From IMG/VR virus record IMGVR_UViG_3300043425_001539, positions 124,001-188,000 of that record: a stretch of 64,000 nt of DNA; one strand, written 5' to 3'. The position numbers were made by a program, and so were the translations under genes. Positions 23,582-48,725 of the stretch are shown here, piece by piece (position 1 is the first letter of the stretch; each line of letters opens with the position of its first letter). A model generated the notes under the pieces. That model had not been told where the DNA came from, ran no database searches, and saw only the letters and a program-made list of their open reading frames with translations.

Positions 23582-24732
23582 ATTTGTGACTTTTTGTGTT
23601 TAAGATAATCAAATAATTCTTTTTCGTTAAAGCGCCCAAGATTTTTTTGCGCAAACCACATATTTTTTCTAATCCGTGCTTTATTTTTTGCATCAAGTTT
23701 TGGATTTTTAAGAAGGTGCATACATGCTGTTTCACATTCTTGAAACCGACCGGTATGAAAAGCTGATACTGAAAATTCATCAAGAGCAAGAAATTCATAT
23801 GCAGCGGTTGCAATGAATAATAAATCTTTTTGAGGATAGGGAGTTTGCGCAGCAATCTTACCAAAATAATATGCATGTTCAAGCATTCGTCTTTTCCTTG
23901 CCTCAATTGCAAGAAGCCAAACAGGTTCAAGACGCCATGGTCTTAAAGACCATGCTTTCATAAGATCAGGTAAAAAATCATGCCAACTATCACCTCGATT
24001 AACTTTACCCCATCCTACCATATATTGTGCGTACCACACTTCCTCGTCCCATCCACCTGCTTCTACGCGTTTTTGATACCATTCAATTGATTTATCCCAT
24101 TGATCCGTATCTCTGTATGATTGAGCAAGATAGAACATATATCGCGCATTCCAAGGCTCATCAGCAATTCCTTGTGTTAATAAACGTATGTCCCGTTCAA
24201 ATTTGTCGTGCTTTGATCCGCCGTCGGATATATCATTAAACCACAAAGAATCCATTTTTTCTCTGGATTTAAAACCTCCTTCACAATCATAATATTCGTG
24301 AGTTACGCCGATACATCGCCATGTTTTTTGTGCATTTAATAATCGAAAGTTGTAATAACTTGTTCCATTATTTTCCTGCATCACATCGTATGCATCAATT
24401 CTTTGATCTAACATGGATTTTTTAAATCCTCTGTTTTCCAATACCATGTCAGCATCAGTAAGAAGAATCCAGTCCCCCCACTTAGTTGCATATGATAAAG
24501 CTTCGTCACGATTATGACCAAAATTAATCCAAGGTCTTTCAATTAATTCACCAGGCTTGTCTTTAAGAAATTTTTTAATTAGATCCTGTGTTCCATCAGT
24601 TGATCCAGTGTCAACTATGCACCATGTGTCAATTATATCATAAACAGATTTTAGACACCTTTCGATAATTTTTGACTCATTTTTGACAATCATATTAAGC
24701 ACGATTGTCTTGCCATTCTTTTTAATGCTCAT
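23578..24732 (-). CDS. GT2 glycosyltransferase with TPR repeats
   Basis: MIVKNES..IERCL, VDTGSTDGT, NFGHNR, TDAD and VTHE motifs; TPR-like FYLAQSY. Confidence 0.85.
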   Translation of the reverse strand: MSIKKNGKTIVLNMIVKNESKIIERCLKSVYDIIDTWCIVDTGSTDGTQDLIKKFLKDKPGELIERPWINFGHNRDEALSYATKWGDWILLTDADMVLENRGFKKSMLDQRIDAYDVMQENNGTSYYNFRLLNAQKTWRCIGVTHEYYDCEGGFKSREKMDSLWFNDISDGGSKHDKFERDIRLLTQGIADEPWNARYMFYLAQSYRDTDQWDKSIEWYQKRVEAGGWDEEVWYAQYMVGWGKVNRGDSWHDFLPDLMKAWSLRPWRLEPVWLLAIEARKRRMLEHAYYFGKIAAQTPYPQKDLLFIATAAYEFLALDEFSVSAFHTGRFQECETACMHLLKNPKLDAKNKARIRKNMWFAQKNLGRFNEKELFDYLKHKKSQI

Positions 24733-26398: not shown

Positions 26399-26647
26399 TT
26401 AATTAATAACCCAACCTTTGGATAATGAATTATTTAGCCAAGTATCAACGTCTTTTTGAATAATCATGCTTACTTGTTCATACTTTTTTGTTGTGTTTCG
26501 TATTTTCACAACATAAACAAACCAAGAATCATCCGGGTCTTCAATGTATTCTATTGAATATGGCGAACGTTTCTTAGTAAGAACATAAAGTTTTTTTGCT
26601 TCTTTTAATTCTTCAGCATATTTATCAAAATTTACTTTGCCTTTCAT
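26399..26647 (-). CDS. Hypothetical protein
   Basis: 82-aa ORF with ATGA coupling. Confidence 0.55.
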   Translation of the reverse strand: MKGKVNFDKYAEELKEAKKLYVLTKKRSPYSIEYIEDPDDSWFVYVVKIRNTTKKYEQVSMIIQKDVDTWLNNSLSKGWVIN

Positions 26648-27078
26648 TCATATTTATCTTTTGAGACTGTAATTTTTGCAATTATTCTTCTGCTATCTAA
26701 TTTTTCTATTGTCTCTTCAACCATTTTTTGATATTCCACATCAACGTTATAATCACTTATAAGGGAAGATTTGCGATACACTGGGGTAATTATTGCGCTA
26801 TTGCCCATAGGTGAAATCTCGTCAATTCTAAAGACGGACAGCGCTATCCCATGCTTATCTTCAAACGCTTTCGAAATATAATCGCCTGCTTCTATGGGTA
26901 TTAACGCTTGTTTTTCTCTATCTTGATCAGCAAAAATTGCATATTTTAAATTTTTATCTTTTCCGTAAATAACAGTTGATCTTCTAAGGTCAGAAAAAGT
27001 CATAACGCTTTCCCATAAGCAAGGCACTCCATTTCTTGTTCTTGCAATTTTAATCTTCTTTTCTTTAATTTCTTCCAT
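26644..27078 (-). CDS. Hypothetical protein
   Basis: 144-aa ORF. Confidence 0.6.
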   Translation of the reverse strand: MEEIKEKKIKIARTRNGVPCLWESVMTFSDLRRSTVIYGKDKNLKYAIFADQDREKQALIPIEAGDYISKAFEDKHGIALSVFRIDEISPMGNSAIITPVYRKSSLISDYNVDVEYQKMVEETIEKLDSRRIIAKITVSKDKYE

Positions 27079-27085: not shown

Positions 27086-27943
27086 TTATTGAATCCAAAA
27101 ATAATTACTTAAAATTTCTTTTGCTGATTCATTGGTTATTTTAGTTTCGTTGGATTGATTAACTAATTCCTGTACGTCGGAAATAAATTTTTGCCCAGTT
27201 GGCAATAATATATATTGCCCATCTTTAGAATTAAATAGCGGTTCTTTAAGCATAAAATAGACAGGATCTTTTGCAGATTCTTTGGATATACGATCAGCTT
27301 TTTCAAAGTGTCTTTCATAATAATGAATATTATCAGCACAATGATAATACTTACCAAGTTCAATATCTTGATATGTTTCACGAAGCCAATGCCACATTGT
27401 CTGTTGAACAAAAGCAAAAAAAGGAGCATCAAAAGTCAATCCATAAAACATATCATTTGACCTCATTTGTACTTTCATATTTAATTTATTATCTCTAATC
27501 CAAAAATTAAGATACATTGTACAAACAAAATCTTTATTGCCTTCATATTGGTATTTAGGACGATTAACAAAACATACCGCTTGACGTGTATGTTTGTCCT
27601 TAATTAATGATTTTTTTGCCCATTCTAATTGTTCATCAAACAAAATGTACCCATAGTTTGAATTTACATACCCTTCGGGTGTTGCAATTTTTTGCCAAAA
27701 GTTTGAAAAATTATTAATAAAACTTGTGTTTGTATCACGTTGCAAATACCAAGATAATTCTCCTAAAAAATATTTCCAATCAAAAGGTCTTGCCTTAAAA
27801 TCTAAAATTGTAAAATTAGGATCAAGTTCAAGTGTTTGAAGCTCAAGTTCTTTTACCTGAAGACCTCTGGGTGAAGAATGAATTCCTTCATTGTTAATTT
27901 TTTCAATTAGCTGTTTAAACTGATTATTTATAGAATTATTCAT
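27086..27943 (-). CDS. Thymidylate synthase-family enzyme, probably dCMP-modifying (hydroxymethylase/hydroxylase-like)
   Basis: SNYG, TRQA, DFVCT catalytic Cys, MRSND and HYYERH motifs; Asp (GLTFDAP) at the position of ThyA Asn177. Confidence 0.75.
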   Translation of the reverse strand: MNNSINNQFKQLIEKINNEGIHSSPRGLQVKELELQTLELDPNFTILDFKARPFDWKYFLGELSWYLQRDTNTSFINNFSNFWQKIATPEGYVNSNYGYILFDEQLEWAKKSLIKDKHTRQAVCFVNRPKYQYEGNKDFVCTMYLNFWIRDNKLNMKVQMRSNDMFYGLTFDAPFFAFVQQTMWHWLRETYQDIELGKYYHCADNIHYYERHFEKADRISKESAKDPVYFMLKEPLFNSKDGQYILLPTGQKFISDVQELVNQSNETKITNESAKEILSNYFWIQ

Positions 27944-28502
27944 TAATAAAAGATTTGATTTGATTGTATATTAAATTAAAGTCTGTATAACTATTATCTT
28001 TGTTTACTTTAATTTTCATTTTATTGATAATTGATGATTTTTCATATGCATTTAAAAATAAATCAATTTCTTTTTGTTTATCTTCTATTTTTGCTGAATA
28101 TGAGTTGCCATCATCTTTTGATGCAACAAATTCGGCATCAGCATATAAAAGAATTAAATAAATTTCAGTGTTTTTATAAAATGAAAAATCTTGTTCTAAA
28201 TGCCAAACCCAGGATTCGGGATTACTATTCCTAAATAACTGTCCATATACAAGTTCACCAATATGAGACCTATTCCAAAACATTATCATATCATTCTTAT
28301 AATACTTATCATTATTTAATGTCCAATATAAACGAAAGTTATCGAAAAAAGTTTTTTTCTGATATTTTGTTTTTTCTTCATTCGTATTACCTATAGGAAA
28401 CGACCAATGTTTTTTAATCACATTTCTTTTTTCTTCAACCAATTTATTAATAACAGTATCTTTTCCTGTTCTATCGGTACCTTCTAATATAATAAGTTTC
28501 AT
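27936..28502 (-). CDS. dNMP / thymidylate kinase
   Basis: P-loop ILEGTDRTGKDT; NRSHIGELVYG. Confidence 0.8.
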   Translation of the reverse strand: MKLIILEGTDRTGKDTVINKLVEEKRNVIKKHWSFPIGNTNEEKTKYQKKTFFDNFRLYWTLNNDKYYKNDMIMFWNRSHIGELVYGQLFRNSNPESWVWHLEQDFSFYKNTEIYLILLYADAEFVASKDDGNSYSAKIEDKQKEIDLFLNAYEKSSIINKMKIKVNKDNSYTDFNLIYNQIKSFINE

Positions 28503-28535
28503 ATTGTTTTTATATTCAAAAGATTTTATAAAGTT

Positions 28536-29300
28536 TTATAAATATCTTCGGGCAATAATGTTGTATGTAGTATCAATATTTTTAATATTAACTTCGGTTA
28601 ATGCATCGATGTATTTCTTGTTTGTCGATTCCCAGATATGGTGACAGTATGCATTAGGATATTCGTGTGCTTCTTCAAATAATTTTATGGATCCTGTCTT
28701 AGACCATGTTGGGTAATGAAAGGCATCATAAGGTAAAATGGTCAAATGATCATTATATGCACCACTCTCCCACATTTTAAGTGGTAATTTTATTGAATGA
28801 ATATTCCAAGTATCATCTTTTAGCCCAGTTGCTGAAAATGTTTTATACTCTTCATACCAATCGGCAATAAATTTATTATTAGGCTCGGCTAAAATAACAG
28901 CGTTACCAATACCTAATTCTCGTTTACCTTCGTACCCTATAACACATTTATGAATTAACAAATCATTATACGATTTAACTGTAATTGTATCAATGTCCAA
29001 ATAAATTCCACCTACTTTTTTGAGTATTTCTAAACGTAAAACATCAGCTTGATGCGCAGGGTGTTTAACAGGATTACCAAATATTTCTGTTGGCGGTTGA
29101 ATAATATTTAGCTTAACATATTCTTTAGATTTAACAATATCCCACCATTCTCCCGTAGGTTCTTGGTCGCAATATAAATCAATAGAAAATCCTGGATTAC
29201 AGATAAAAGCTGATTCTATTGCAAGATAGTGAGTAATTCCAAATGATTTATGTTTATTTTCTTTTGATAAAAAAATGAAATGTATTTTATTAGGTATCAT
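28536..29300 (-). CDS. GT32-like glycosyltransferase (DXD motif)
   Basis: IPNKIHFI and HQADVLRLEILKKVGGIYLDIDT. Confidence 0.85.
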   Translation of the reverse strand: MIPNKIHFIFLSKENKHKSFGITHYLAIESAFICNPGFSIDLYCDQEPTGEWWDIVKSKEYVKLNIIQPPTEIFGNPVKHPAHQADVLRLEILKKVGGIYLDIDTITVKSYNDLLIHKCVIGYEGKRELGIGNAVILAEPNNKFIADWYEEYKTFSATGLKDDTWNIHSIKLPLKMWESGAYNDHLTILPYDAFHYPTWSKTGSIKLFEEAHEYPNAYCHHIWESTNKKYIDALTEVNIKNIDTTYNIIARRYL

Positions 29301-29301
29301 A

Positions 29302-30516
29302 TTAAAATAGGTTTTTTGATTTTATATTTTTATGCGTATAATCTATCTTTTGTAAAATATTATTTTGTTTCACAAATTCACCCCCAAAATCTTTGATTTC
29401 TCCTTTTATGAATCTAACTACTTCATTTGTCCAATCCATCGCAGTGGTCACAGGAACATTTTGACAAATGTGATTCATTTTAACGGCTGTCATTTCAAAA
29501 TCGTGTGGCAATCCCATTAAATGCATTGCTTCTCTAATCGTTAATCCTCTTTCTTTGGTTGGATGAATAATTGAAGAATTTTTAGAAATAATTGCATTGG
29601 TTGCATCTTTAAAAATAAGAGGAGAACCATCCCACCATCCTAAGTTCATTGACATTTTATTTTTAACATGCGCTGCTATTTTTTCTATTCCTTTTTCGTT
29701 GTTTTCACGCCCCCAATTTTCAAATTCATTCAATAAATTTTCCTTTATTACCCATTGTAACATTGTTTTGTATGAGCTGTCAGTTATTTTCTGAATAGTC
29801 CATCCTTTTTCTTTTGCAAAAAGAAACCAAGGATTATTTTTAATGTCTCCAATTCCAAAAAATTCGTCCATGTGTTTGACGTTATCAGGTATTTGATCCA
29901 AATATTCGGCTAAATTAGGAGCTTTTCTACTATAAAAATTTAGAATAGGAGCTTCGCTGTCTTTCCAAAAAAAATAAAAAGTTCGCATTCGATGTTGAGG
30001 TATTCCGTGTAAAAAAGTATCGGTTTTAATCACTGACATTGAATACCCAAATTCTTTTCCGATTGACCGTAAATTTTCAAGTACTTTTTCTCCCATTCCA
30101 CTGTATAGTCCAGGTGCATTTTCTCCCCAAAAAACTTTTGGTTTAATTTGTCCTAAAACCAATTTAGCGGTTTTATACATCCATTCATTTTGTATTGCAT
30201 CCGCCCCTCGTGCTCTATCAGAACCTCCATTATTGCTATTTAGCATTGATAATCCTGCACAAGGACAAACGCTTGAAACAAAATCAACATCTTCAAATAA
30301 AGCACTTTCTACATCAGGTAATGTATTTTCATCTGGGTCAACCAACATATACGGGCTTTCGGAAAAATAATTAATGCAATGACTATCATTATCCTGAAAC
30401 GCAGGATAAGATAGAATAAAAGATGGCTCCGATTCTGTAACTTTTTTATTTGCTACTGTCATCCCACCAATAAGCGGTACAACACTTCCGTATTTAATTT
30501 TTTTAATAGACTTCAT
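29302..30516 (-). CDS. DNA cytosine-C5 methyltransferase-like protein with degenerate SAM-binding motif I
   Basis: CPCAGLS (motif IV), GENAPGL (VI), PQHRMRTF (VIII), RGLTIREAMHLMGLP and QNVPV; motif I reads VPLIGG instead of FxGxGG. Confidence 0.75.
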   Translation of the reverse strand: MKSIKKIKYGSVVPLIGGMTVANKKVTESEPSFILSYPAFQDNDSHCINYFSESPYMLVDPDENTLPDVESALFEDVDFVSSVCPCAGLSMLNSNNGGSDRARGADAIQNEWMYKTAKLVLGQIKPKVFWGENAPGLYSGMGEKVLENLRSIGKEFGYSMSVIKTDTFLHGIPQHRMRTFYFFWKDSEAPILNFYSRKAPNLAEYLDQIPDNVKHMDEFFGIGDIKNNPWFLFAKEKGWTIQKITDSSYKTMLQWVIKENLLNEFENWGRENNEKGIEKIAAHVKNKMSMNLGWWDGSPLIFKDATNAIISKNSSIIHPTKERGLTIREAMHLMGLPHDFEMTAVKMNHICQNVPVTTAMDWTNEVVRFIKGEIKDFGGEFVKQNNILQKIDYTHKNIKSKNLF

Positions 30517-30523
30517 TTTTTTG

Positions 30524-31279
30524 TTAAAACAATTGTTTATTATTTATCAAGTTTCCAGATATAACAGTTTTTGCTCTTTCTTCAAAATATTCCCATTTTT
30601 TAGGATTTTTAGCTCCTTGTGTTTTGCAAGATCTTAAATTTTCGTCCCAACTCCTTTTCCAACCAGCAATATCCGAATATGAAGATATTGTTTTAATAAT
30701 TGAAGGTGTTATTTGATACGTCATATTTTGAGGCTGAATGTGTTCAGCTAAAAATACATCTATTGACATTGAACATTTACCGTCATCTTCATTATCAACT
30801 ATATGTATTACTTTTTCTAATCCTTTATGTGTAAACAACATTGCATGAGTTAACAATGTGTATTGTGAAAGAGCAACCATATCATTAATAGGAGCCGATG
30901 GATATTTATCAGCACATCCTAAATATAATAGATCAAATTCAACTATACCTGATGAATTAAACCAAGCATCTAATTGTTCATACAAATCTTCGGGTATTAA
31001 AGCATCATCCTCAAGAACCAATATTCGATTATATCCTTTTTTCAAGGCATCTCGATAAATTTCTATATGCGATGACCAACATGCAATACAGGAAGGCTTT
31101 TTAACTCTTGTTCCTTTTCTATGTTTTTCTAAATCAATATCTGCTGCTTTGGTTGCATCCCAACGCTGGACATTAAGCCCAGCGTTGTTTGCCGTTTTTT
31201 GAATTTCATTCCACCTATCCTGTCTAAAATCCAAATTTATTACATATGCCGCATCCCAAAATTTTTCAAAGTTTTTCAT
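30524..31279 (-). CDS. GT25 glycosyltransferase
   Basis: YVINLDFRQDR, ACWSSH, ILVLEDDA and LLYLG motifs. Confidence 0.85.
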   Translation of the reverse strand: MKNFEKFWDAAYVINLDFRQDRWNEIQKTANNAGLNVQRWDATKAADIDLEKHRKGTRVKKPSCIACWSSHIEIYRDALKKGYNRILVLEDDALIPEDLYEQLDAWFNSSGIVEFDLLYLGCADKYPSAPINDMVALSQYTLLTHAMLFTHKGLEKVIHIVDNEDDGKCSMSIDVFLAEHIQPQNMTYQITPSIIKTISSYSDIAGWKRSWDENLRSCKTQGAKNPKKWEYFEERAKTVISGNLINNKQLF

Positions 31280-31306
31280 TTAATCTTAATAATATTTTTC
31301 ATTCAG

Positions 31307-32701
31307 CTAGAATAAAGACTTTGCTTTTACTTTAGCCAACTCTTTAATTTTTTGAACCAAAGGTTCCTCAATAATTTCTCTTAAAATTTCATCATTATAT
31401 TCTTCGCTCAATTTAATATTTACATTCGTTTCTTCTAAAAAACCGTTGAAAATGTTTGCTAGGAATGTTCCTTTACGTACACCTTTTAGGAATTTAACCT
31501 GCAATTCTTTTACCAATTTAATTCTCATAGCAGGATTTGATTCAAGTTCTTCAATCTTATCAAACATTTCCTGTGGAGTTTTAACTCTAATGTAATGATC
31601 CTTTGGTACTAAAGAATATTGCGTATCATAGTCAGGGTGAAAAAATGGAACTACTCCAACTCGCAGCATTTCAGCGTATTTACTGGTTACCCAATTAGGA
31701 CGAATTGGTATAATTAAAGTATAGCGAGTTCTTTTAAAGATTTCATCAATCTCATCAGCTGTTTTAAACCCTTTAAATTGTGAATAATTTGCAGTAAACC
31801 GTTCGTCCCATTTTCCATATATGTGATAATCATCTGAACCAGGACGATTTAAAATCCACGTTTTAAGAGCTTCTAATCTGTAGTCAATTTCTTGATGACC
31901 GTAAGCAGATTGCATTGCAACAACCGAAAATTTAACATCTCTCTCGTTATCTGGCGGTTCAATGGCTTCTCCAATTAAATTTAGTTTTTCAATTCCTGAA
32001 TATTTAAGAAAGAAATCTTCAGTTATTTCCTGTCCTTGTGATGGATTTGGATATGTATCATAATGCACCAAATTTATAGTTTCATTGTATTGCGCTATTC
32101 CCATTTTGGGTGCATTAACCATATCCCGCCATTTTTGAGTTTTCTTAATGTATCTGGGATCAGTCATTACCATGTACCATGGAATTTTTGACATATTTAG
32201 CCAATGAACAATCGGAGCACTATAAATTAGTGTCATGTCCAAAGTAGTTGTCATTCTGCTATTATCACGAATGCTTGGAATAATTCCTGGAATATTAACC
32301 ATCGTTAAACCTTGTGAAGCAAAACCTATACCAAAATCAGGCTGTTCTAAATGAGATACTTTTTCCCACAAATTTTTGTATGCTTCAATGTCTTTATTAC
32401 TTCTATCATTTAAACTTCCATCCTCATTTTTTGTTCTACCAGAAGATGTACTAATACCAAATTCAGTATAAATATCACGAATTATTCCTCTTGGATCAAT
32501 TTCAATTTTTTCTTGATTTGTGAGTTTTTTCCAGTCGCTTCTTTGCATAATCCAAAGTTCACTCACCGAGGCATTTCTTGCAAGACCAAAAAATAATTTA
32601 TAATATTCTGAACTGCCGTCTGACCTTTTTATTTTATTTTTGTTAAATTTTAAAGAAGAACCGATAGGGAAAATGGCAATCTTTATGTTTTCAGTTTTCA
32701 T
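31307..32701 (-). CDS. GT-B glycosyltransferase, phage DNA-glycosyltransferase-like
   Basis: TDPRY, IYGKW, RYTLIIP and WVTSKYAEMLRVGVVPFFHPDYD; lies in the nucleotide-modification block. Confidence 0.55.
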   Translation of the reverse strand: MKTENIKIAIFPIGSSLKFNKNKIKRSDGSSEYYKLFFGLARNASVSELWIMQRSDWKKLTNQEKIEIDPRGIIRDIYTEFGISTSSGRTKNEDGSLNDRSNKDIEAYKNLWEKVSHLEQPDFGIGFASQGLTMVNIPGIIPSIRDNSRMTTTLDMTLIYSAPIVHWLNMSKIPWYMVMTDPRYIKKTQKWRDMVNAPKMGIAQYNETINLVHYDTYPNPSQGQEITEDFFLKYSGIEKLNLIGEAIEPPDNERDVKFSVVAMQSAYGHQEIDYRLEALKTWILNRPGSDDYHIYGKWDERFTANYSQFKGFKTADEIDEIFKRTRYTLIIPIRPNWVTSKYAEMLRVGVVPFFHPDYDTQYSLVPKDHYIRVKTPQEMFDKIEELESNPAMRIKLVKELQVKFLKGVRKGTFLANIFNGFLEETNVNIKLSEEYNDEILREIIEEPLVQKIKELAKVKAKSLF

Positions 32702-32703
32702 AA

Positions 32704-34113
32704 TTAAAAATAATTGTTAAGTTTATTTTTCCAATTTTTGTTAAATGTTTTAATACTAAAAAGTTCTTCTAAATCATCAAGAAGTTTTTCACGTTCTTCA
32801 ATGTTTTCGTCAAAATATTTGACTTTTTGTTCTATATCTTTATGTGAATACACTAACAATTTAGATTGTATATATTCCGGTATTTGCAAATAAGCAGGAT
32901 CATAAAGAGGATCCAATAGTGGAAGAATTCTTAACCGCGCATATAATATCGGACGAAAATTTAAAGAATCATAATTTGATACACATCTAAATAATATTCC
33001 ATATTTATAGCGTGCAACTTGATCTTCATATTCATCAGGCACTAAATGTCCTAAATAATGAGGATGATTTTCCACATCATATAAAAGTTCAGAAAAAACC
33101 TCTTTTACTTTATTAAGATATTTATCGTTGCGTGATTTAGAGTGCAAAATTCCATTAGATCTTAGCGGAATGTATAAGCCAGCATCCGGAACTCGTAAAT
33201 TTTTAAGATATTTTTCCCATAGTTCAATCCTTCCTCCTTTTTCTTGAAATATAGTACCTGCAAAAAATACTGATTTATCTTTTTTACGCTTATCACTGCC
33301 AAACGATAATAAATCAATTTTTTTGTTTCTGCCATCCCATATAATATGTTGCAATTCCCCTATCGGAAATTCATAATAATCTCTGGTTCCTCTCTTATCA
33401 TCTTTAAAATAATATGCTTTAAACGGAATATTTTCATATTCAAAAATAGGAGAATAAAAAGCAGGATCATTTATAAATGCATATGCTGTATCAAAATTTT
33501 TGGCTTCTTTGAAAGCATACTTAACTAAATTGACAGTTATGTTTTTGAAATGTGACCCAAAAGCCAAAATCCTACATTTTGCATCAAAATTTTTGCATAT
33601 CTTTCGATTGGCAATTTTAATTTTTTCCAATTCAAAAGTATCAGGATTAATAGAATCATGGAATTCATTTTGCTGCAAATGTAAATCTAAATGTTCTTTT
33701 TTAGAAACATAAGAAGTCAACGGCAAAATAAAATCATCAGGATTAAATATTAATATTTTGGATAATTTAGAAAAAAATCCTTTTCCAAAAGTTTTGACAA
33801 ATTCCTCTGTTAAAATATTATGATTATATTCACAGTTAGAATCTTCTAAATCATCTACTCTCTTAAATCTTTCACTTTTTAAATATTTAATATAAATCTG
33901 ATCAATCCCCCACACTTGCCCATATTTTAAAAGTTCTTCATTATCATCTTTTTGGCCAGTTAAAATAACTAAGTTATATTTTTCTGTTAAAAATTCCATA
34001 ACAGGTACAGAAAATCCCATTATGTATGACATTCTTTTAAAATTTCTTGGCATTATACATAGTGCCATAGGTTTTTCTGAAGGCTCTACATCATTAAATT
34101 TAGTGTATAACAT
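32704..34113 (-). CDS. GT-B glycosyltransferase, T4 beta-glucosyltransferase-like C-terminus
   Basis: FINDP, VFFAGT...GGR and SLNFRP...ILPLLDPLYD motifs. Confidence 0.5.
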   Translation of the reverse strand: MLYTKFNDVEPSEKPMALCIMPRNFKRMSYIMGFSVPVMEFLTEKYNLVILTGQKDDNEELLKYGQVWGIDQIYIKYLKSERFKRVDDLEDSNCEYNHNILTEEFVKTFGKGFFSKLSKILIFNPDDFILPLTSYVSKKEHLDLHLQQNEFHDSINPDTFELEKIKIANRKICKNFDAKCRILAFGSHFKNITVNLVKYAFKEAKNFDTAYAFINDPAFYSPIFEYENIPFKAYYFKDDKRGTRDYYEFPIGELQHIIWDGRNKKIDLLSFGSDKRKKDKSVFFAGTIFQEKGGRIELWEKYLKNLRVPDAGLYIPLRSNGILHSKSRNDKYLNKVKEVFSELLYDVENHPHYLGHLVPDEYEDQVARYKYGILFRCVSNYDSLNFRPILYARLRILPLLDPLYDPAYLQIPEYIQSKLLVYSHKDIEQKVKYFDENIEEREKLLDDLEELFSIKTFNKNWKNKLNNYF

Positions 34114-34116
34114 AAT

Positions 34117-35724
34117 TTATTTGGATAAATTCTTTTCTTTAATTAAATTAATACAGCGGATTAAAAAAGCACGTTGCCTGTTTGGATCATCTGAATGGAA
34201 AGGAATTGCTGTTAAAAGTAAAAGAATTGCCAATCTTTCAAGTAATTCCGTATCATATCCCAATTCATTTAATAATTCTTTTAGAAATAAATGTAATTCT
34301 TTAGAATTTTCAACCCAATTTATTTCAACTACTTCTTGATTATCTTTTTTAACAATCTTATATCTATCAGCAATTAACATGGAATACCCGCAATAAAAAT
34401 CTTGCAACAGTTTTCCCATATCATATCGCATATCACCAGCAGTTCCTACTATATCCCCAAAACTCCCGCGTGGGTCTACAAATTTAATGTTTCCGCTATA
34501 TGCATCATATATGATATTTGCTAAATGGCTATCACCGTGTATTACTCCTGACCAATTTGGATTTTTGGAAAGTTCGGTTGCAGTGTTTTCAAAAAAAGTA
34601 TTTACTAATTGCTGTTGTTCTTGAGAAATTTTAACTTGTTTAAATATTGTTGCAAGACGATCAGCATTTCTTTGGTAATAATTTCTATAGCAAACGTCAT
34701 TAACATTCAGATTTTCTAAATTAGAATCTTTACATAAAAAGATTGAATGATGTACTTTTATAATTTTACGAATGATCTCTCGCCAAACATCAAGTCTTAA
34801 ATTATCATAAACAAGAACTTCATTTAAGGCAACGCCAGGTTCAAGTGACATTTCTAAAACACCATAATCACTATCCAACACTCTTGGACAAAATAAAGAT
34901 TGGAATTTATTTAATGATTTAAACCATTTCTTTTCCTGCTCAATCTTTTCTTTTTTAATCTCTGTGTCTGAGGTTTTTGTAATAGTCCCAAAAAAAGTGT
35001 TAACTTCAATTTTATTAAACGCTCTTGCGGATCTATTTAATAAACGTGCTTTTGATTCATAATATGAATTTAACTCTCCACAATCATACCAATACTGTGC
35101 TTCAATTAAATAATCCCCCCAATTCAGTTTAGATAATCTAGCATATTCAGTAAGTAATTCAGCAATTTGGTGTTCTCCTTTATGTGTTGGACAAATCATT
35201 CCTCTTTTAACTGAATCCACAAAAATATCTCTAGACGTAAAATTATACACTCCAATTAATGCTAAATTAGTTGGCGGGTCAGATAATTTATCATATAATT
35301 TTCCATTATGGTCAATCAGGCACCAGCGTTGTGGGTCGTCTACTTTATTGACAGCTAAAAAATCATTATTATAATCAAATTCATCAAGACATATAGTATC
35401 ACCTAGCCAAACAGTAACTGGCCCAGGCTGTTCTGATGCGTCTGCACCCAACATAATTGCATGTAATGGGCCTTTTTTATCACGCTGAGTTACAAATTTA
35501 AAATTTAACTGCGGGTAAACTCTTTTCAAGAATTTTCGAATATCTCCAAGTTCATTTTCAACTATAATGTATTCTGAAAACTTTGTTTTTGATTTTTCTA
35601 AATGTTCAATAATATAACTGATTAATGGCCTGCCATTTACAGGTATCATTGCTTTACTAACGCCATTAGATAATGGTTTCATGCGAGTTGCTAAGCCCGC
35701 CGCTGGGATAATAACTGTCCTCAT
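34117..35724 (-). CDS. Sugar-phosphate nucleotidyltransferase fused to an APH-like kinase
   Basis: IIPAAGLATRMKP..SKAMIPVNGRP, WLGD and WYDCG; kinase motifs IHGDSHLANI, FVDPRG and YDMGKL. Confidence 0.8.
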   Translation of the reverse strand: MRTVIIPAAGLATRMKPLSNGVSKAMIPVNGRPLISYIIEHLEKSKTKFSEYIIVENELGDIRKFLKRVYPQLNFKFVTQRDKKGPLHAIMLGADASEQPGPVTVWLGDTICLDEFDYNNDFLAVNKVDDPQRWCLIDHNGKLYDKLSDPPTNLALIGVYNFTSRDIFVDSVKRGMICPTHKGEHQIAELLTEYARLSKLNWGDYLIEAQYWYDCGELNSYYESKARLLNRSARAFNKIEVNTFFGTITKTSDTEIKKEKIEQEKKWFKSLNKFQSLFCPRVLDSDYGVLEMSLEPGVALNEVLVYDNLRLDVWREIIRKIIKVHHSIFLCKDSNLENLNVNDVCYRNYYQRNADRLATIFKQVKISQEQQQLVNTFFENTATELSKNPNWSGVIHGDSHLANIIYDAYSGNIKFVDPRGSFGDIVGTAGDMRYDMGKLLQDFYCGYSMLIADRYKIVKKDNQEVVEINWVENSKELHLFLKELLNELGYDTELLERLAILLLLTAIPFHSDDPNRQRAFLIRCINLIKEKNLSK

Positions 35725-36116
35725 ATTAAATTTTCTTTTATAATAATTGATTCGTAATTTTTAGATTTTTCAGTAATAAATGATTTAAGAGAAAGATTTC
35801 TATTATCTACATAAACAGGATTTTTCCCCCAAGGTTTGCCTGTGTGTAATTCGTGGTATTTAACATTAAATCTGCTCAGCCAATCTATTAAGATTGGTTC
35901 GTGATATTCTTTTATTTTTTCTTTGTTTCCATTAAAAGTGCGATAACCGCGCGCGGTAAACAAGATAATTTTATGCCCTTCATCAAATAATTGATTTATT
36001 TTATATATTGTTTCTTTGATAGGTACAGCGTTTGGATAATCATAAGACCCTGAATCCAATTTAGGAGCATCACATATAGTACCGTCAATATCTATAATAA
36101 AAGTCATTAATTCCAT
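35721..36116 (-). CDS. HAD-family phosphatase (capsule biosynthesis phosphatase-like)
   Basis: IDIDGTIC, LFTARG and GKPW..YVDN motifs. Confidence 0.8.
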   Translation of the reverse strand: MELMTFIIDIDGTICDAPKLDSGSYDYPNAVPIKETIYKINQLFDEGHKIILFTARGYRTFNGNKEKIKEYHEPILIDWLSRFNVKYHELHTGKPWGKNPVYVDNRNLSLKSFITEKSKNYESIIIKENLI

Positions 36117-36343
36117 TATAAAATTTTTATTTTTTTTACCCAAATTGTGTCACCAGGAAATAGGTTTTTGTTAGTTACAAAAGTACCGCATTTTGTAAAT
36201 ACCTGGGTTTGGATTCTTTCAGATTGACCATGCATCAAAACTTTTGTTTTTTGAGATCTTTCAACAACACAAGGACATTTAGTTGTTAAACTATCAACAC
36301 ATGAAGATAATGTAAATAAAGTACTTAAAATAAATATTTTCAT
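36116..36343 (-). CDS. Small lipoprotein
   Basis: Lipobox LSSC after a hydrophobic N-terminus. Confidence 0.55.
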   Translation of the reverse strand: MKIFILSTLFTLSSCVDSLTTKCPCVVERSQKTKVLMHGQSERIQTQVFTKCGTFVTNKNLFPGDTIWVKKIKIL

Positions 36344-36356: not shown

Positions 36357-37334
36357 TTAAAATTTAAAAAGTTTTTGATTATAGAAATAAAACATACCTA
36401 TTTCTGATGAATTTTCGTTTAAAATTTCTATATTTTCAAGAATAAATCCATTACTTAAAAATAAATTTAGCAAATCATTTTTAATTGTTTTTGAATGATA
36501 TTCAATAGCAACTTTTTTAATTTTATTTTGTAAAAAAGATTGATCCAAAGAATTAAAAATTTCAAATTCAGCGCCTTCACAATCAACTTTTAAATAATCA
36601 ATTTTATCTAAATTTTCTTGAGCAATTAAATCATTTAAACTAATTGCGTTTACAAAAATTTCTTGTGATATAGCATCAAAAAAATTATTTTGAGTTTCTG
36701 GGTTATAAATTCTGTTGGAAACACCACCTTCAGCTAATAAAAAATTAATAGTTCCTGATTTATCCGAAACGGCATATTTATAACATTTAATGTTGTTAAA
36801 ACTACTTACATTTTTCTCTAAACACTCATATTCTTTAGGGCTTGGTTCAACTGCAACAACTTTGCTTGGATTAAAATTTTGCGCATAGACGGAAAACATT
36901 CCTAAATTAGCCCCAATGTCAACAACAACATCATCTTTTTCTATTTTTACAAAGTCCCTGTCATAAATTTTATCATAAAAAACTTCCATCAAAGTATAAA
37001 ATGCTGGGAGATTGATGTGATTAAAAAATATTTTTTTTCCGTTAACAACTGGAGATCTATAAGAACCTGCTAAAATAACCGTTTCTTTTTGTATTAATTC
37101 TTCAAGTTCTACGATAAAAGATATTTTTGTAAGATATCTATCCATTATTGCAGGAATGATATAATATGAAGAATTTTCGGATAATTCCCAATTATCAAAA
37201 ACACATACAGGAAGTAAACTTTCATCATCATAAATACTCACTTTATATTTGTGTATTCCTGGATATTTTACAGTAAAATGAATTTCGCTTAATTCTTGAT
37301 TAACTTGATCTAATTCAATTAATTTATTCATCAA
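36357..37334 (-). CDS. FkbM family methyltransferase
   Basis: VVDIGANLG, AVEP and YLKVDCEGAE motifs. Confidence 0.85.
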   Translation of the reverse strand: MMNKLIELDQVNQELSEIHFTVKYPGIHKYKVSIYDDESLLPVCVFDNWELSENSSYYIIPAIMDRYLTKISFIVELEELIQKETVILAGSYRSPVVNGKKIFFNHINLPAFYTLMEVFYDKIYDRDFVKIEKDDVVVDIGANLGMFSVYAQNFNPSKVVAVEPSPKEYECLEKNVSSFNNIKCYKYAVSDKSGTINFLLAEGGVSNRIYNPETQNNFFDAISQEIFVNAISLNDLIAQENLDKIDYLKVDCEGAEFEIFNSLDQSFLQNKIKKVAIEYHSKTIKNDLLNLFLSNGFILENIEILNENSSEIGMFYFYNQKLFKF

Positions 37335-38811
37335 TTTTATTATTTATGTGGAAAATTACTTGATTGTAATAGTTTAAAAAATGCTCATTATACAAATCCC
37401 ATTTGATATCTATTCCGTCCAACGAATAAACATCAAACTGTTTAAATCTTGGTAGGTATTCATATATAAATTTTTTAAATTTTTCTTTTCGTTCTTGATT
37501 TTCAAGGTGCCATTCACCTACAATTACTTTAACATTATTAACCAAAAAATCTATGTTTTCTTCATTAAATATGTAATATTCGCCGCCTTCACAATCAGTT
37601 TTCAAAAAATCAATATATTCAATTGCATATAATTCTCTGAAAGTTTTAAATTTAATTGTTTCTACGTTTCCATTCCAAAAATATGTATCAAATGCATTAG
37701 TAATGCCATCTCCTTCATATATTGCCTTATTAATATTACAAACAGGCATACCTAAAGTATTCTTTACAAGAATGGGAAATTCAACTTTAGAAGGTTCCAA
37801 TGTATATACTTGAAGAGGCTTTTTATCTAAAATAAAATATGTAAAAGGACCTACACTTGCACCAATATCAACCACTATATCGCCTTCTTGAACATCATAA
37901 AGCTTGTTATAAACTTTTTCGATAAATATTTCATTAATTAAAAATTCTTTAGTCGATGTGTGTTCCATCGGTCCCCAGTTAAAATTTGCCAATAAACTAT
38001 TTTTTTGGTATTGAGAATCAATAATGTTAACATAAAAAATTGGTAATGATAATTTCATTGCGGCTGGCAATATCAGCATTTCTTTGTTCCAATAAAAATA
38101 AATGTGAATAAGATGAACGGGATAAGAATGATATCCCATATCATGTGGGATTGCATAATCTTCTCTAACATCCCAAATATTATATCCTAATCTATAAATA
38201 GCATTACTTTGTTCTACTTGTCCTACTTCCTCAGCCCTGCGATAATTATATTCAGCATTTTCTGTTATTTCTGTTGTATGAGGTAAACATCCATATTTTT
38301 CCCATGCTTCATTTAGAACTTTATAAGAAGAAAAACCTATTGAATTTCCTGCGTGTACAGGCGCTGGATATTCAGGAGTAGGTCTTCTAACAACCATACA
38401 AAGATATCCGGTATTAGGTAAACTATTAAATTTTTTAATTAAATATTGGTCAAAATTATTTATGTTAAAGAAATAATCGTCTTCGGTGAATATGTAATAG
38501 TCATACGTATCTTTATATTTTCCAAATACATCTGACCATGCTCCATAACTCATGCCAATGTTTTTTCTTTGTATTAATTCTACATCAGCATTTCTGATTT
38601 TATTAGGAATTAATTCTTGTGCTTGCGCAAATAATTCTGAGTGTTCATTTTCATAATTAACAACAAAAACTATTTTTTCTAAATCATGTTCTAGATTACA
38701 TAAATCATTAATTTGTGTTTTTAAATAAATTAATCGGTCTTGGTCATACACAGAATTACTATGTCTTCTGTTACCAAACCAAACACAACATACATAACAT
38801 ACTTTATTCAT
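37324..38811 (-). CDS. Glycosyltransferase-like domain fused to FkbM methyltransferase
   Basis: N-terminal NIGMSYG...YIFTEDDY; C-terminal VVDIGASVG and FLKTDCEGGE. Confidence 0.75.
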   Translation of the reverse strand: MNKVCYVCCVWFGNRRHSNSVYDQDRLIYLKTQINDLCNLEHDLEKIVFVVNYENEHSELFAQAQELIPNKIRNADVELIQRKNIGMSYGAWSDVFGKYKDTYDYYIFTEDDYFFNINNFDQYLIKKFNSLPNTGYLCMVVRRPTPEYPAPVHAGNSIGFSSYKVLNEAWEKYGCLPHTTEITENAEYNYRRAEEVGQVEQSNAIYRLGYNIWDVREDYAIPHDMGYHSYPVHLIHIYFYWNKEMLILPAAMKLSLPIFYVNIIDSQYQKNSLLANFNWGPMEHTSTKEFLINEIFIEKVYNKLYDVQEGDIVVDIGASVGPFTYFILDKKPLQVYTLEPSKVEFPILVKNTLGMPVCNINKAIYEGDGITNAFDTYFWNGNVETIKFKTFRELYAIEYIDFLKTDCEGGEYYIFNEENIDFLVNNVKVIVGEWHLENQERKEKFKKFIYEYLPRFKQFDVYSLDGIDIKWDLYNEHFLNYYNQVIFHINNKIDE

Positions 38812-39764
38812 TATTTTAAATGTTTAATATAATTTATGGCAAAAAAATGATTTTTATCAATTTGTGTAAAATCATATTCTTTTTCCAATGTTTTGTCAAT
38901 AATTATTTTTATACTATCAATTTCATCAATACTTCCAATTCTATTTAATCTCCAAACATTATTACTCATTTTAACATTTAATGTTGATTGATTATTAACT
39001 ATAAAAAAAGTGTCAATATCTTTTTCATATTTGTTAAATCCTAATACAAAGCTGTATATGCTTTCTCCATCACTTAAAACAATAGCCCAATCATCATTAT
39101 TATCAGTGTTAAATAAATTTGTTTTTATGCAAGCGTTGTATTTATCCAAATTTTCTTGATATGCAACATCTAAATCAAAGAATTCCTTACTAAATTCTTC
39201 TAAAACTTTGCAATTATTTGAATTTACGTATCTTTCTACATTGTTATCAAAATAATTTATCCAATCATTTGTCAAAACCGAAATATTTAACGAATATGAT
39301 GAATAAACGCCCAAATTAGCAGGATGATTATACCAAATTATTGGATGATTATCCAATTTAATTGAGTTTTCTTCTAAAATTTTGTGATCAACAATAATAC
39401 TATCATATTCTAAAAAATGCAGTTTGTTGTACCCAATAGCTTTACAAAATTTTATACCATCAAATATTAATTTTCCTGCTGCAATTATATGATTAAATTT
39501 TTTCACTTCTGATGTAGAAATATGAAACAAATCATTACGCCAAGCTAACGAAAATTTATGATAAAAATTAGTAAGCAGTTGGTTTTCTTTATTATAAATA
39601 ACATAATTACATAGTTCAAAGACTTCATCAGAAAGTTTTGAATTTGCTGAAACCACCACATCATATTTTTCTCGATTAATTGAATTTATTAAATTAATCA
39701 ATAATTTTTTCCTAACTAAATCAGGTGTGTGCGCAGTTATTAAAATAACTTCTTTATTAGTCAT
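38811..39764 (-). CDS. Glycosyltransferase-like hypothetical protein (paralogue of 41455..42456)
   Basis: VILITAH, YNKENQL and HFLEYD versus MISTY, YTKENPV and FHLIYD in the paralogue. Confidence 0.5.
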   Translation of the reverse strand: MTNKEVILITAHTPDLVRKKLLINLINSINREKYDVVVSANSKLSDEVFELCNYVIYNKENQLLTNFYHKFSLAWRNDLFHISTSEVKKFNHIIAAGKLIFDGIKFCKAIGYNKLHFLEYDSIIVDHKILEENSIKLDNHPIIWYNHPANLGVYSSYSLNISVLTNDWINYFDNNVERYVNSNNCKVLEEFSKEFFDLDVAYQENLDKYNACIKTNLFNTDNNDDWAIVLSDGESIYSFVLGFNKYEKDIDTFFIVNNQSTLNVKMSNNVWRLNRIGSIDEIDSIKIIIDKTLEKEYDFTQIDKNHFFAINYIKHLK

Positions 39765-40242: not shown

Positions 40243-40248
40243 TTTAAT

Positions 40249-41430: not shown

Positions 41431-41454
41431 TAATATTTAATTTATTTATTTATC

Positions 41455-42456: not shown

Positions 42457-42461
42457 ATTAA

Positions 42462-47262: not shown

Positions 47263-47263
47263 G

Positions 47264-48720: not shown

Positions 48721-48725
48721 GTGTA

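What the first reader, a model, noticed from the sequence alone, without database searches (positions are those of the whole stretch)
27086..36116. Candidate new cytosine hypermodification pathway
Seen: a thymidylate-synthase homologue with Asp at the pyrimidine-specificity position, a dNMP kinase, two phage-type GT-B enzymes, a nucleotidyltransferase-kinase fusion, a HAD phosphatase and a C5-MTase-like gene, all clustered. Known: Asp versus Asn at this site distinguishes T4 dCMP hydroxymethylase from ThyA, and RB69-type phages cluster an NTP-transferase, a phosphatase and a dNMP kinase to arabinosylate modified cytosine. Inference: the DNA carries a sugar-modified (possibly di-glycosylated) C with a phage-made NDP-sugar, and the gene set differs from T4 and RB69.
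Basis: partly seen in the sequence, partly recalled or inferred. Interest (0 to 1): 0.65.

Follow-up and report, generated by a model that had tools for sequence, protein, structure and literature searches.

The report
Phage sugar-modified hydroxymethylcytosine gene cluster
A large uncultured T4-related phage carries a tight operon that most likely replaces cytosine in its DNA with hydroxymethylcytosine and then decorates it with phage-made sugars, a new variant of a known anti-restriction strategy that includes an unexplained methyltransferase-like partner.

Summary
Window 27086-36143 (minus strand) is one tightly packed operon of nine genes. They are a thymidylate-synthase (TS) homologue, a Tmk-like nucleotide kinase, a GT32-like glycosyltransferase (GT), a C5-methyltransferase-like gene, a GT25, two GT-B enzymes, a nucleotidyltransferase-kinase fusion and a HAD phosphatase.

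The TS homologue matches T4 dCMP hydroxymethylase at every diagnostic position tested, including L143D and N177D. It keeps Asp169, so it lacks the D169N mark of the RB69-type 5-hydroxy-dCMP synthases. The base is therefore predicted to be 5hmC, not 5hoC.

The least expected result concerns the methyltransferase-like gene. It belongs to a virus-only clade with altered motifs (PLIGG, PCA). All 31 TS genes found near clade members are hydroxymethylase-type, and a GT-B usually sits beside it. Its role is unknown.

The sugar identity and the DNA chemistry are untested. I rate this a new variant of a known kind.

The parts
27086..27943 (-). Thymidylate-synthase homologue, predicted dCMP hydroxymethylase (5hm-dCMP synthase), 285 aa
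   Evidence: PF00303 E 2.6e-18. The best PDB relative is T4 dCMP hydroxymethylase, E 3e-18. At E. coli ThyA positions 80/143/146/147/169/173/177/209 it reads W-D-C-T-D-G-D-Y, the same as T4 gp42; RB69 gp48 reads A-E-C-T-N-V-D-F.
27936..28502 (-). Tmk-like P-loop nucleotide kinase, 188 aa, predicted to turn 5hm-dCMP into 5hm-dCDP
   Evidence: phrog_761 thymidylate kinase E 5e-10. 25% identical to the RB69 in-cluster kinase gp45, E 3e-5, and no T4 gp1 homologue was found elsewhere in the genome. Conserved next to the TS gene in relatives.
28536..29300 (-). GT32-like GT-A glycosyltransferase with a DXD motif, 254 aa
   Evidence: PF04488 Gly_transf_sug E 6e-12. Motif YLDIDT at residue 102. 36% identical orthologues lie in the clusters of L005-L007.
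29302..30516 (-). C5-cytosine-methyltransferase-like protein of a virus-only clade, 404 aa, role unknown
   Evidence: PF00145 E 2.4e-20. The catalytic PC, ENx, QxRxR and N of motif X are kept, but motif I is PLIGG and motif IV is PCA, invariant across about 85 relatives. Two paralogues are present in relatives. Linked to hydroxymethylase-type TS and GT-B genes.
30524..31279 (-). GT25-family GT-A glycosyltransferase, 251 aa
   Evidence: PF01755 E 1.9e-13. LEDDA motif. A GT25 also sits in the cluster of relative L018.
31307..32701 (-). GT-B glycosyltransferase with the fold of T4 DNA beta-glucosyltransferase, 464 aa
32704..34113 (-). Second GT-B glycosyltransferase with a T4-BGT-like fold, 469 aa (no Pfam hit)
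34117..35724 (-). Sugar-1-phosphate nucleotidyltransferase fused to an APH/choline-kinase-type kinase, 535 aa (AfhE-like architecture)
   Evidence: PF00483 E 1.8e-15 with weak APH. Motifs GLATR..SK and HGDSHLAN. The kinase part is 26% identical to RB69 gp52, E 1e-5. 55-58% identical orthologues occur in relatives, and homologues in XG4 and Planchet.
35721..36143 (-). Small HAD phosphatase (AfhF-like), 132-140 aa
   Evidence: DIDGT motif. PDB 1xpj E 1e-16 and 9iqw (HY126 deposition series) E 1e-8. RB69 gp51 33% identity, E 1.7e-11. TIGR01689 capsule biosynthesis phosphatase E 8e-22.
26399..27078 (-). Two small conserved proteins of unknown function (144 aa and 82 aa) directly downstream of the TS gene
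   Evidence: Conserved in the same position in L004-L007, L018, L020 and L060. No Pfam, PHROG or Atlas match.
22694..24732 (-). GT2 glycosyltransferase with TPR repeats plus a 295-aa partner, syntenic with the cluster in the closest relatives; membership uncertain
   Evidence: PF00535 E 5e-13, with weak SunS-type peptide glycosyltransferase similarity. 56-58% identical orthologues lie downstream of the TS gene in L004/L022, L018 and L020.
36357..45445 (-). Adjacent sugar-tailoring island. It holds two FkbM methyltransferases, a PseH-like GNAT, a PseC-like aminotransferase, a Vat-like hexapeptide acetyltransferase and two further GTs. It may supply or tailor the sugar, or may serve another glycan.
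   Evidence: The island lies between the HAD and TROVE genes, which are only about 1.6-3 kb apart in relatives L018 and L033. PseC-like genes lie about 7 kb upstream of the MTase-like gene in 12 of 80 loci. The hexapeptide acetyltransferase is 81% identical to one inside the L006 cluster.
47508..49112 (-). Split HldE-like pair (heptose-7-P-kinase-like PfkB and heptose-1-P-adenylyltransferase-like) plus a cupin: a possible second NDP-sugar route
   Evidence: TIGR02198 E 1e-36 and TIGR02199 E 1e-24. PF01467 and Cupin_2. Homologues of the small nucleotidyltransferase sit directly beside the MTase-like/GT-B pair in several other lineages.

Best explanation
This is a cytosine-hypermodification operon of a distant T4-like jumbo phage. 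It most likely yields glycosylated 5-hydroxymethylcytosine.

The steps below are inferred from homology; none is shown biochemically.

1. A gp56-like dCTPase, encoded outside the window, drains dCTP to dCMP.
2. The TS homologue hydroxymethylates dCMP with methylene-tetrahydrofolate.
3. The in-cluster Tmk-like kinase and host NDP kinase produce 5hm-dCTP, which the T4-like polymerase incorporates in place of dCTP.
4. The kinase-nucleotidyltransferase fusion and the HAD phosphatase build an NDP-sugar by the AfhE/AfhF logic: phosphorylate C1 of a sugar phosphate, remove the distal phosphate, then add NMP. The starting sugar phosphate comes from the host or from neighbouring phage genes.
5. After replication, one or both BGT-like GT-B enzymes attach sugar to the 5hmC hydroxyl in DNA.
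6. The GT25 and GT32-like GT-A enzymes probably extend the chain.
7. The C5-MTase-like enzyme is a conserved partner. My best guess is that it C5-methylates cytosines that escaped replacement. Direct action on 5hmC is not excluded.
For: - The TS signature W80/D143/C146/T147/D169/G173/D177/Y209 is identical to T4 gp42. The diagnostic positions come from PMC13326640.
- The genome holds a T4 gp56 homologue (E 2e-24), a dCMP deaminase, a separate canonical ThyA, and T4-like gp41/43/44/46/47/61/uvsX/gp2/gp4.
- Both GT-B models (pLDDT 91-93) have T4 DNA beta-glucosyltransferase as their best solved match, 3 Z units above other GT-B enzymes. The top viral match is annotated DNA beta-glucosyltransferase.
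- The HAD matches 1xpj, 9iqw and RB69 gp51. The fusion has the AfhE architecture and matches RB69 gp52.
- Operon order is conserved in relatives and in cultured phages.
- VPE25/VFW, relatives of Planchet, have bisulfite-resistant cytosines (PMC4999554).
Against: - There is no chemical or enzymatic evidence.
- Sequence-profile similarity of the GT-B proteins to T4 BGT is not significant, and the GT-B fold is generic.
- GT25, GT32 and GT2 families normally act on LPS, polysaccharide or protein. The cluster sits inside a 25-kb sugar island that could serve virion or cell-surface glycans.
- No arabinose-5-P isomerase or other first-step enzyme was identified, so the sugar is unknown.
- A canonical C5-MTase has no substrate in fully hmC-substituted DNA, so its conserved presence is not explained by the simple model.
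- Most close TS relatives (73 of 80 loci) lack the MTase-like gene within 10 kb, and 75 of 80 lack these GT-B genes there.
Confidence: 0.65

Rival explanations
1. The phage makes 5hmC (plain, or glucosylated by one GT-B with host UDP-glucose). Most of the glycosyltransferases and the NDP-sugar enzymes instead build a glycan on virion proteins or the host envelope, and sit next to the nucleotide genes only because of the surrounding sugar island.
For: The cluster is embedded in a 23.5-49 kb island. That island holds FkbM methyltransferases, PseC/PseH-like enzymes, a hexapeptide acetyltransferase, TOD1-like and GT2-TPR (SunS-like) transferases and an HldE-like pair, all typical of surface-glycan pathways. 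GT25 and GT32 are LPS or polysaccharide families.
Against: The HAD, the fusion, the GT-B genes, the MTase-like gene, the kinase and the TS gene keep their order in relatives that lack the large island. The same HAD, fusion, GT-B and TS module occurs in XG4 and in Enterococcus phages without such an island. Both GT-B models match a DNA glucosyltransferase best.
Confidence: 0.15
2. The system is an RB69/DLP3/HY126-type pathway. The TS homologue would be a flavin-dependent 5-hydroxy-dCMP synthase, and the DNA would carry arabinosyl-5-hydroxycytosine.
For: The component list is the same: Tmk-like kinase, GT-B enzymes, TS homologue with Asp177 and an acidic residue at 143, an AfhF-like HAD and an AfhE-like fusion.
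Against: The diagnostic D169N is absent. W80, G173 and Y209 follow T4 gp42, not RB69 gp48. The protein aligns with T4 gp42 over 211 residues (E 5e-18) but with RB69 gp48 over only 77 (E 1e-5). No SIS-type arabinose-5-P isomerase was found in the 84%-complete genome.
Confidence: 0.05
3. The modification is essentially methylation. The C5-MTase-like enzyme, and possibly the TS homologue acting as a dCMP methylase, would give 5mC, and the glycosyltransferases would be unrelated.
For: The MTase-like protein keeps the catalytic Cys, Glu, Arg-x-Arg and Asn. Cyanophage S-TIM5 has a member of the clade outside any hypermodification cluster: the nearest TS homologue lies about 2.4 kb away on the opposite strand.
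Against: Position 143 of the TS homologue is Asp, the hydroxymethylase type, not hydrophobic (criterion from PMC13326640). The MTase-like gene lies inside the GT operon and next to a GT-B in many lineages.
Confidence: 0.04

Closest known systems
T4/T-even hydroxymethylcytosine glucosylation (gp56 dCTPase, gp42 dCMP hydroxymethylase, gp1 kinase, alpha- and beta-glucosyltransferases)
   Same: The TS active-site signature is the same as gp42. A gp56 homologue and T4-like replication genes are present. Two GT-B enzymes have T4 BGT as their best structural match.
   Different: - The kinase is Tmk-like, not gp1-like.
- The phage encodes its own NDP-sugar enzymes instead of relying on host UDP-glucose.
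- Two or three extra GT-A enzymes and a C5-MTase-like gene sit in the operon.
- All genes are clustered rather than scattered.
Arabinosyl-5-hydroxycytosine (Afh) clusters of RB69, DLP3 and HY126 (PMC13326640)
   Same: It has the same parts list and operon logic: Tmk-like kinase, TS homologue acting on dCMP, GT-B DNA glycosyltransferases, an AfhF-like HAD and an AfhE-like nucleotidyltransferase-kinase fusion.
   Different: - The TS homologue lacks D169N and the other RB69-type changes, so 5hmC rather than 5hoC is predicted.
- No arabinose-5-P isomerase was found.
- Sequence identity is only 26-33%.
- GT-A enzymes and a C5-MTase-like gene are added.
Phage TET / C5-methyltransferase / glycosyltransferase hypermodification clusters (PMC8256090)
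   Same: A C5-MTase-family gene is linked to DNA glycosyltransferases. Relative L018 has a weak hit to the TET-associated glycosyltransferase family.
   Different: No TET/JBP dioxygenase is present in the genome. The hydroxymethyl group is predicted to come from a pre-replicative TS homologue, so the MTase-like product is not needed as a TET substrate.
Enterococcus phages VPE25/VFW/Planchet, Pseudoalteromonas phage XG4 and Bacillus phage G
   Same: They are cultured phages with homologous modules: hydroxymethylase-type TS, kinase, HAD, nucleotidyltransferase (fused to a kinase in XG4 and Planchet) and a GT-B of the 464-aa family. XG4 and phage G also have the MTase-like gene. VPE25 cytosines resist bisulfite.
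   Different: The sugar is not known in any of them. They lack the second GT-B family, the GT25 and GT32-like genes and the large sugar island. Identities are 26-43%.

Membership tests
[quoted passage not shown] | Thymidylate synthase fold and family membership, with the catalytic Cys (ThyA C146) | tested here: met
   PF00303 at 66.5 bits, above the cut-off of 24.3. Cys is aligned with T4 C148 and ThyA C146.
[quoted passage not shown] | Asp at ThyA N177 (cytosine specificity) and an acidic residue at ThyA L143 (water access, giving a hydroxymethyl rather than a methyl product) | tested here: met
   D177 and D143 in the window protein and in all four close relatives. The criteria are as stated in PMC13326640.
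[quoted passage not shown] | Converts dCMP and methylene-THF to 5hm-dCMP | not testable with these tools
   Needs expression and LC-MS, or an enzyme assay.
5-hydroxy-dCMP synthase (RB69 gp48 / DLP3 gp80 type) | Asn at ThyA D169 (the D169N diagnostic residue) | tested here: not met
   Asp is kept at 169. Positions 80, 173 and 209 also follow T4 gp42 (W, G, Y), not RB69 gp48 (A, V, F). The criterion comes from PMC13326640.
T4 DNA beta-glucosyltransferase-like GT-B (DNA hmC glycosyltransferase) | Two-Rossmann GT-B fold closest to T4 BGT | tested here: met
T4 DNA beta-glucosyltransferase-like GT-B (DNA hmC glycosyltransferase) | Significant sequence homology to T4 BGT | tested here: inconclusive
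   hhalign of the family profiles against T4 BGT gave E 0.013 and 0.028, probability below 4%. There is a weak phrog_7922 beta-glucosyltransferase hit, E 4e-4. BFVD's top hit (E 1e-36) carries only an automatic name.
T4 DNA beta-glucosyltransferase-like GT-B (DNA hmC glycosyltransferase) | Transfers sugar from an NDP-sugar to 5hmC in duplex DNA | not testable with these tools
   Needs an in vitro assay on hmC-DNA.
Afh-type phage NDP-arabinose pathway (AfhE fusion, AfhF phosphatase, arabinose-5-P isomerase) | Bifunctional nucleotidyltransferase plus kinase protein | tested here: met
   NTP_transferase at residues 5-229 and an APH-type kinase at 256-449 with HGDSHLAN. The kinase domain matches RB69 gp52, E 1e-5.
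Afh-type phage NDP-arabinose pathway (AfhE fusion, AfhF phosphatase, arabinose-5-P isomerase) | Small HAD phosphatase of the 1xpj/AfhF type adjacent to the fusion | tested here: met
   1xpj E 1e-16, 9iqw E 1e-8, RB69 gp51 33% identity. It overlaps the fusion gene by 4 nt.
Afh-type phage NDP-arabinose pathway (AfhE fusion, AfhF phosphatase, arabinose-5-P isomerase) | Phage-encoded SIS-type arabinose-5-phosphate isomerase | tested here: not met
   There is no PF01380 match and no RB69 gp55 match in the 238-kb record. The record is estimated 84% complete, and a Gram-negative host could supply arabinose-5-P.
DNA cytosine-5 methyltransferase (PF00145) | Catalytic motifs IV (Pro-Cys), VI (Glu-Asn-x), VIII (Q-x-R-x-R) and X (Asn) | tested here: met
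   CPCAG, GENAP, PQxRxR and QNVP are conserved in about 85 family members. Pfam gives 73.6 bits against a cut-off of 22.
DNA cytosine-5 methyltransferase (PF00145) | Canonical AdoMet-binding motif I (F-x-G-x-G-G) and the P-C-Q form of motif IV | tested here: not met
   Motif I is (I/V)-P-L-I-G-G: Phe becomes Val or Ile and the first Gly becomes Leu, as aligned to E. coli Dcm FAGIGG. Motif IV is P-C-A. Both are invariant in the clade. The N-terminal third does not align significantly to any solved C5-MTase.
TET-dependent cytosine hypermodification | TET/JBP dioxygenase encoded with the C5-MTase and the glycosyltransferase | tested here: not met
   No PF12851 match in the genome at E 0.1.

The most novel reading that the evidence does not exclude
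The virus-only C5-MTase-like clade (PLIGG / PCA / ENAP / QNVP) may not be an ordinary methylase. It could be a post-replicative enzyme that works on hydroxymethylcytosine or its glycoside. It might use covalent C6 catalysis or an enlarged cofactor pocket to install or exchange a group at the 5-position.

In that case these phages would carry a so far undescribed cytosine derivative. With four to five glycosyltransferases and the adjacent amino-, acetyl- and methyl-sugar genes, the DNA might also bear an unusually complex oligosaccharide.
Probability: 0.15. Interest if true: 0.85.

Novelty: new variant of a known kind. Interest (0 to 1): 0.55.

Why it matters
Hypermodified cytosines are a main phage defence against restriction enzymes and CRISPR. 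They are also a source of enzymes for epigenetic sequencing and DNA labelling.

This cluster combines a T4-type base (5hmC) with the phage-made NDP-sugar logic so far tied to 5-hydroxycytosine phages, and it adds extra transferases. It therefore predicts a sugar-hmC adduct that has not been described.

It also exposes a large virus-only clade of C5-methyltransferase-like enzymes, with at least 525 relatives in IMG/VR. The clade is genomically tied to dCMP hydroxymethylases and BGT-like transferases. Classical hmC biology does not expect this link, and it can be tested directly in cultured carriers such as Pseudoalteromonas phage XG4.

Tried and rejected
- Megablast of the 9-kb cluster against 50,697 phage records found nothing. 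Comparison had to be made at protein level.
- The promoter and terminator scan of 22-38 kb gave counts equal to shuffled sequence, so it says nothing about operon boundaries.
- hhalign of both GT-B family profiles against the T4 BGT sequence was not significant. Only the fold supports the BGT link.
- MazG (PF03819) and trimeric dUTPase (PF00692) searches of the genome were negative. The dCTPase candidate was found only with T4 gp56 itself as the query.
- SIS and TET/JBP searches were negative.
- The ESM Atlas look-up of the conserved 144-aa protein gave no usable hit. It also has no Pfam or PHROG match.
- The GT32-like and GT25 proteins have almost no relatives in sequenced phage records.
- Literature searches found no paper describing the pairing of a C5-MTase with a dCMP hydroxymethylase. 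The 2013 comparative-genomics paper on DNA base modification systems is not held.
- I considered complex prediction for the MTase-like/GT-B pair and did not run it, because I do not claim that they bind.

Full report
**What is there.**
The window is bases 124001-188000 of a 238,475-bp IMG/VR virus record that is about 30% G+C and estimated 84% complete. From 23.5 kb to 49 kb every gene lies on the minus strand.

In order of transcription they are:
- a HAD phosphatase (35721-36143);
- a nucleotidyltransferase-kinase fusion (34117-35724);
- a 469-aa protein without a Pfam hit (32704-34113);
- a 464-aa Glyco_trans_1_2 protein (31307-32701);
- a GT25 (30524-31279);
- a C5-methyltransferase-like protein (29302-30516);
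- a GT32-like DXD transferase (28536-29300);
- a Tmk-like kinase (27936-28502);
- a thymidylate synthase (TS) homologue (27086-27943).

Two GT-A transferases had been overlooked.

**Which base.**
The best solved relative of the TS homologue is T4 dCMP hydroxymethylase (E 3e-18).

A 2026 study showed that the RB69 and DLP3 TS homologues make 5-hydroxy-dCMP, not 5-hydroxymethyl-dCMP. It named the diagnostic positions in E. coli ThyA numbering (PMC13326640):
- N177D marks cytosine as substrate;
- an acidic residue at L143 marks a non-methyl product;
- D169N marks the 5-hydroxy enzymes.

I aligned the window protein with E. coli ThyA, T4 gp42, RB69 gp48 and others, all fetched with the tools. At positions 80/143/146/147/169/173/177/209 the window protein and its four relatives read W-D-C-T-D-G-D-Y, exactly as T4 gp42 does. 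RB69 gp48 reads A-E-C-T-N-V-D-F. The protein aligns with gp42 over 211 residues (E 5e-18) but with gp48 over only 77.

The genome also has a second, canonical ThyA with L143 and N177 (302 bits), a dCMP deaminase and a homologue of T4 gp56 dCTPase/dUTPase (E 2e-24). Homologues of T4 gp41, gp43 (in two pieces), gp44, gp46, gp47, gp61, UvsX, gp2 and gp4 mark it as a distant T4-like phage. No gp1-type kinase was found, so the in-cluster Tmk-like kinase is the candidate for 5hm-dCMP. It is weakly similar to the RB69 in-cluster kinase gp45.

Together this is the T4 scheme for replacing dC by 5hmdC. It is an inference from homology, not a shown activity.

**The transferases.**
I built family alignments from metagenomic homologues. 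The 469-aa protein has 44 homologue clusters, all unnamed. The 464-aa protein has at least 141. Both folded with high confidence, at pLDDT 92.8 and 91.4.

Profile-to-sequence comparison with T4 BGT is not significant. The link therefore rests on fold and gene context only.

The two GT-A proteins carry their family motifs, YLDIDT and LEDDA. They recur in relatives' clusters: the GT32-like gene in L005-L007 and a GT25 in L018. Their acceptor is unknown, and chain extension is my inference.

**The sugar donor.**
The fusion has a sugar-1-phosphate nucleotidyltransferase N-domain (GLATR...SK) and an APH/choline-kinase-type C-domain (HGDSHLAN).

The HAD has the DIDGT motif. It matches PDB 1xpj (E 1e-16), the same structure reported as the best hit for RB69 gp51 and DLP3 gp81. 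It also matches 9iqw, which by its code I take to belong to the HY126 deposition series (E 1e-8), and RB69 gp51 directly (33% identity).

In HY126, RB69 and DLP3 this pair (AfhE, AfhF) converts arabinose-5-P via the 1,5-bisphosphate and the 1-phosphate to UDP-arabinofuranose. The third enzyme of that pathway, an SIS-type arabinose-5-P isomerase, is absent here. I therefore accept the activation logic but leave the sugar open: a host-derived pentose or other sugar phosphate is possible.

The surroundings offer further possibilities.
- A 9-kb block (36357-45445) lies between the HAD and a TROVE gene. It holds two FkbM methyltransferases, PseH-like and PseC-like enzymes, a hexapeptide acetyltransferase and two more transferases. 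In relatives L018 and L033 the HAD and TROVE genes are only about 1.6-3 kb apart.
- A split HldE-like kinase/adenylyltransferase with a cupin lies at 47508-49112.
- PseC-like genes and the small nucleotidyltransferase recur next to the MTase-like/GT-B pair in other viral lineages. This hints that such genes can belong to DNA-sugar pathways but does not prove it.

**The methyltransferase-like gene.**
It passes the Pfam threshold and keeps the catalytic Pro-Cys, Glu-Asn, Q-x-R-x-R and motif-X Asn. Motif I, however, is (I/V)PLIGG instead of FxGxGG, and motif IV is PCA instead of PCQ. Both changes are invariant in about 85 relatives. Its N-terminal third does not align significantly with any solved C5-MTase.

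The clade has at least 525 relatives in IMG/VR and is virus-only in the Atlas clusters. Close relatives of this phage carry two adjacent paralogues that differ mainly in the region between motifs VIII and IX.

Among the 80 best loci:
- 31 have a TS homologue within 10 kb;
- 27 have a 464-type GT-B;
- 24 have a 469-type GT-B.

All 31 TS genes lie on the same strand as the MTase-like gene. Twenty-eight show the full hydroxymethylase signature W-D-C-T-D-G-D-Y. The other three ORFs are cut by contig ends and match it at every position they cover. The MTase-like gene usually lies directly downstream of a GT-B.

The reverse link is weak. Of the 80 closest hydroxymethylase-type TS loci, only 7 have the MTase-like gene nearby and only 5 have these GT-B families.

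No TET/JBP gene is present, so this is not the known MTase-TET-transferase route.

A classical C5-MTase cannot methylate 5hmC, so the conserved linkage needs another explanation. The conservative reading is sequence-specific C5-methylation of cytosines that escape replacement. The bolder reading is action on hmC itself. From memory, and not tested here, enlarging the HhaI pocket at the residue equivalent to the Q of PCQ is known to admit larger transferable groups. I could not decide between these readings.

**Relatives and cultured carriers.**
The full block is: HAD, fusion, one AGT-like or 464-type GT-B, the 469-type GT-B, one or two MTase-like genes, a GT-A and/or an EEP nuclease, the kinase, the TS gene, then two small conserved proteins and a GT2-TPR pair. 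It occurs in about seven further IMG/VR contigs.

Reduced versions occur in cultured phages:
- Pseudoalteromonas phage XG4: TS, HAD, fusion, GT-B, MTase-like gene;
- Bacillus phage G, gp301-gp319;
- Enterococcus phages of the VPE25/Planchet group. VPE25 and VFW cytosines were shown to resist bisulfite and restriction (PMC4999554).

Their TS homologues all show the T4-type signature.

**Verdict.**
The refinement is that the base is predicted to be 5hmC rather than the 5hoC of RB69.

The kind of system is known. The combination is not described in the literature I could search: a T4-type base, Afh-like sugar activation without the isomerase, two BGT-like and two GT-A transferases, and a dedicated C5-MTase-like clade. 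I rate it a new variant of a known kind.

Confidence is 0.65 in the main model. The principal rival (0.15) is that much of the sugar machinery serves a non-DNA glycan.

Noticed in passing
window 36357-45445 (-): A 9-kb sugar-tailoring block lies between the HAD gene and the TROVE gene. It holds two FkbM methyltransferases, an unknown 317-aa protein, a PseH-like GNAT, a PseC-like aminotransferase, an unknown 333-aa protein, a Vat/CatB-like hexapeptide acetyltransferase, a phrog_14179 GT and a TOD1/MUCI70-like GT. Relatives L018 and L033 have only about 1.6-3 kb there. The acetyltransferase is 81% identical to one inside the L006 cluster, far above the roughly 50% of its neighbours, which suggests recent exchange.
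   Followed up: partly
window 47508-49112 (-): A split HldE-like pair (RfaE domain I-like PfkB kinase and RfaE domain II-like adenylyltransferase) sits with a WbuC-like cupin, which may indicate an ADP-heptose-like route. Homologues of the small nucleotidyltransferase sit next to the MTase-like/GT-B pair in other viral contigs (L047, L050, L054, L069, L073).
   Followed up: partly
window 45529-47336 and 49141-50010 (-): A TROVE (Ro60-like) protein gene is followed by a tRNA-Gly. A six-tRNA array (Trp, Gln, Lys, Thr, Pro, Met) bounds the sugar island. No Y-RNA-like Rfam hit was found.
   Followed up: partly
window 50543-53442 (-): Four tandem paralogues are made of DUF285 (BspA-type) repeats, with scores up to 356 bits.
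   Followed up: no
genome G000:C1:59287-60366 and 42366-43238 (outside the window): The T4-like DNA polymerase gp43 is encoded in two pieces about 16 kb apart. The gp56-like dCTPase gene lies directly next to the N-terminal piece.
   Followed up: no
genome G000:C1:221096-222157 (L001): The canonical ThyA (363-aa open frame) carries an insertion of about 36 residues between the catalytic Cys region and the RS(x)D motif, relative to E. coli ThyA.
   Followed up: no
L009 (Cyanophage S-TIM5) 8766-9602 and 11986-13203: The annotated ThyA of S-TIM5 reads W-C-C-H-D-G-D-Y: Asp177 but Cys143 and His147. This pattern matches neither ThyA, T4 gp42 nor RB69 gp48. The phage also has a member of the MTase-like clade and a protein named DNA alpha-GT in BFVD.
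   Followed up: no
L004 8354-9061, L007 8735-9433, L018 about 11227: Relatives carry an endonuclease/exonuclease/phosphatase-family nuclease inside the modification cluster, where this phage has glycosyltransferases. It may be a nuclease for unmodified DNA.
   Followed up: no
L018 5709-6488: A 259-aa protein in the closest divergent relative's cluster has a weak, sub-threshold hit to the TET-associated glycosyltransferase family PF20691 (E 9e-4).
   Followed up: no
window 17780-18367, 19966-20682, 25889-26389 (-): Three further genes were noted: an SLT lytic transglycosylase, a GH16 glycoside hydrolase, and a small protein with a weak Kinase-PolyVal hit just downstream of the cluster.
   Followed up: no
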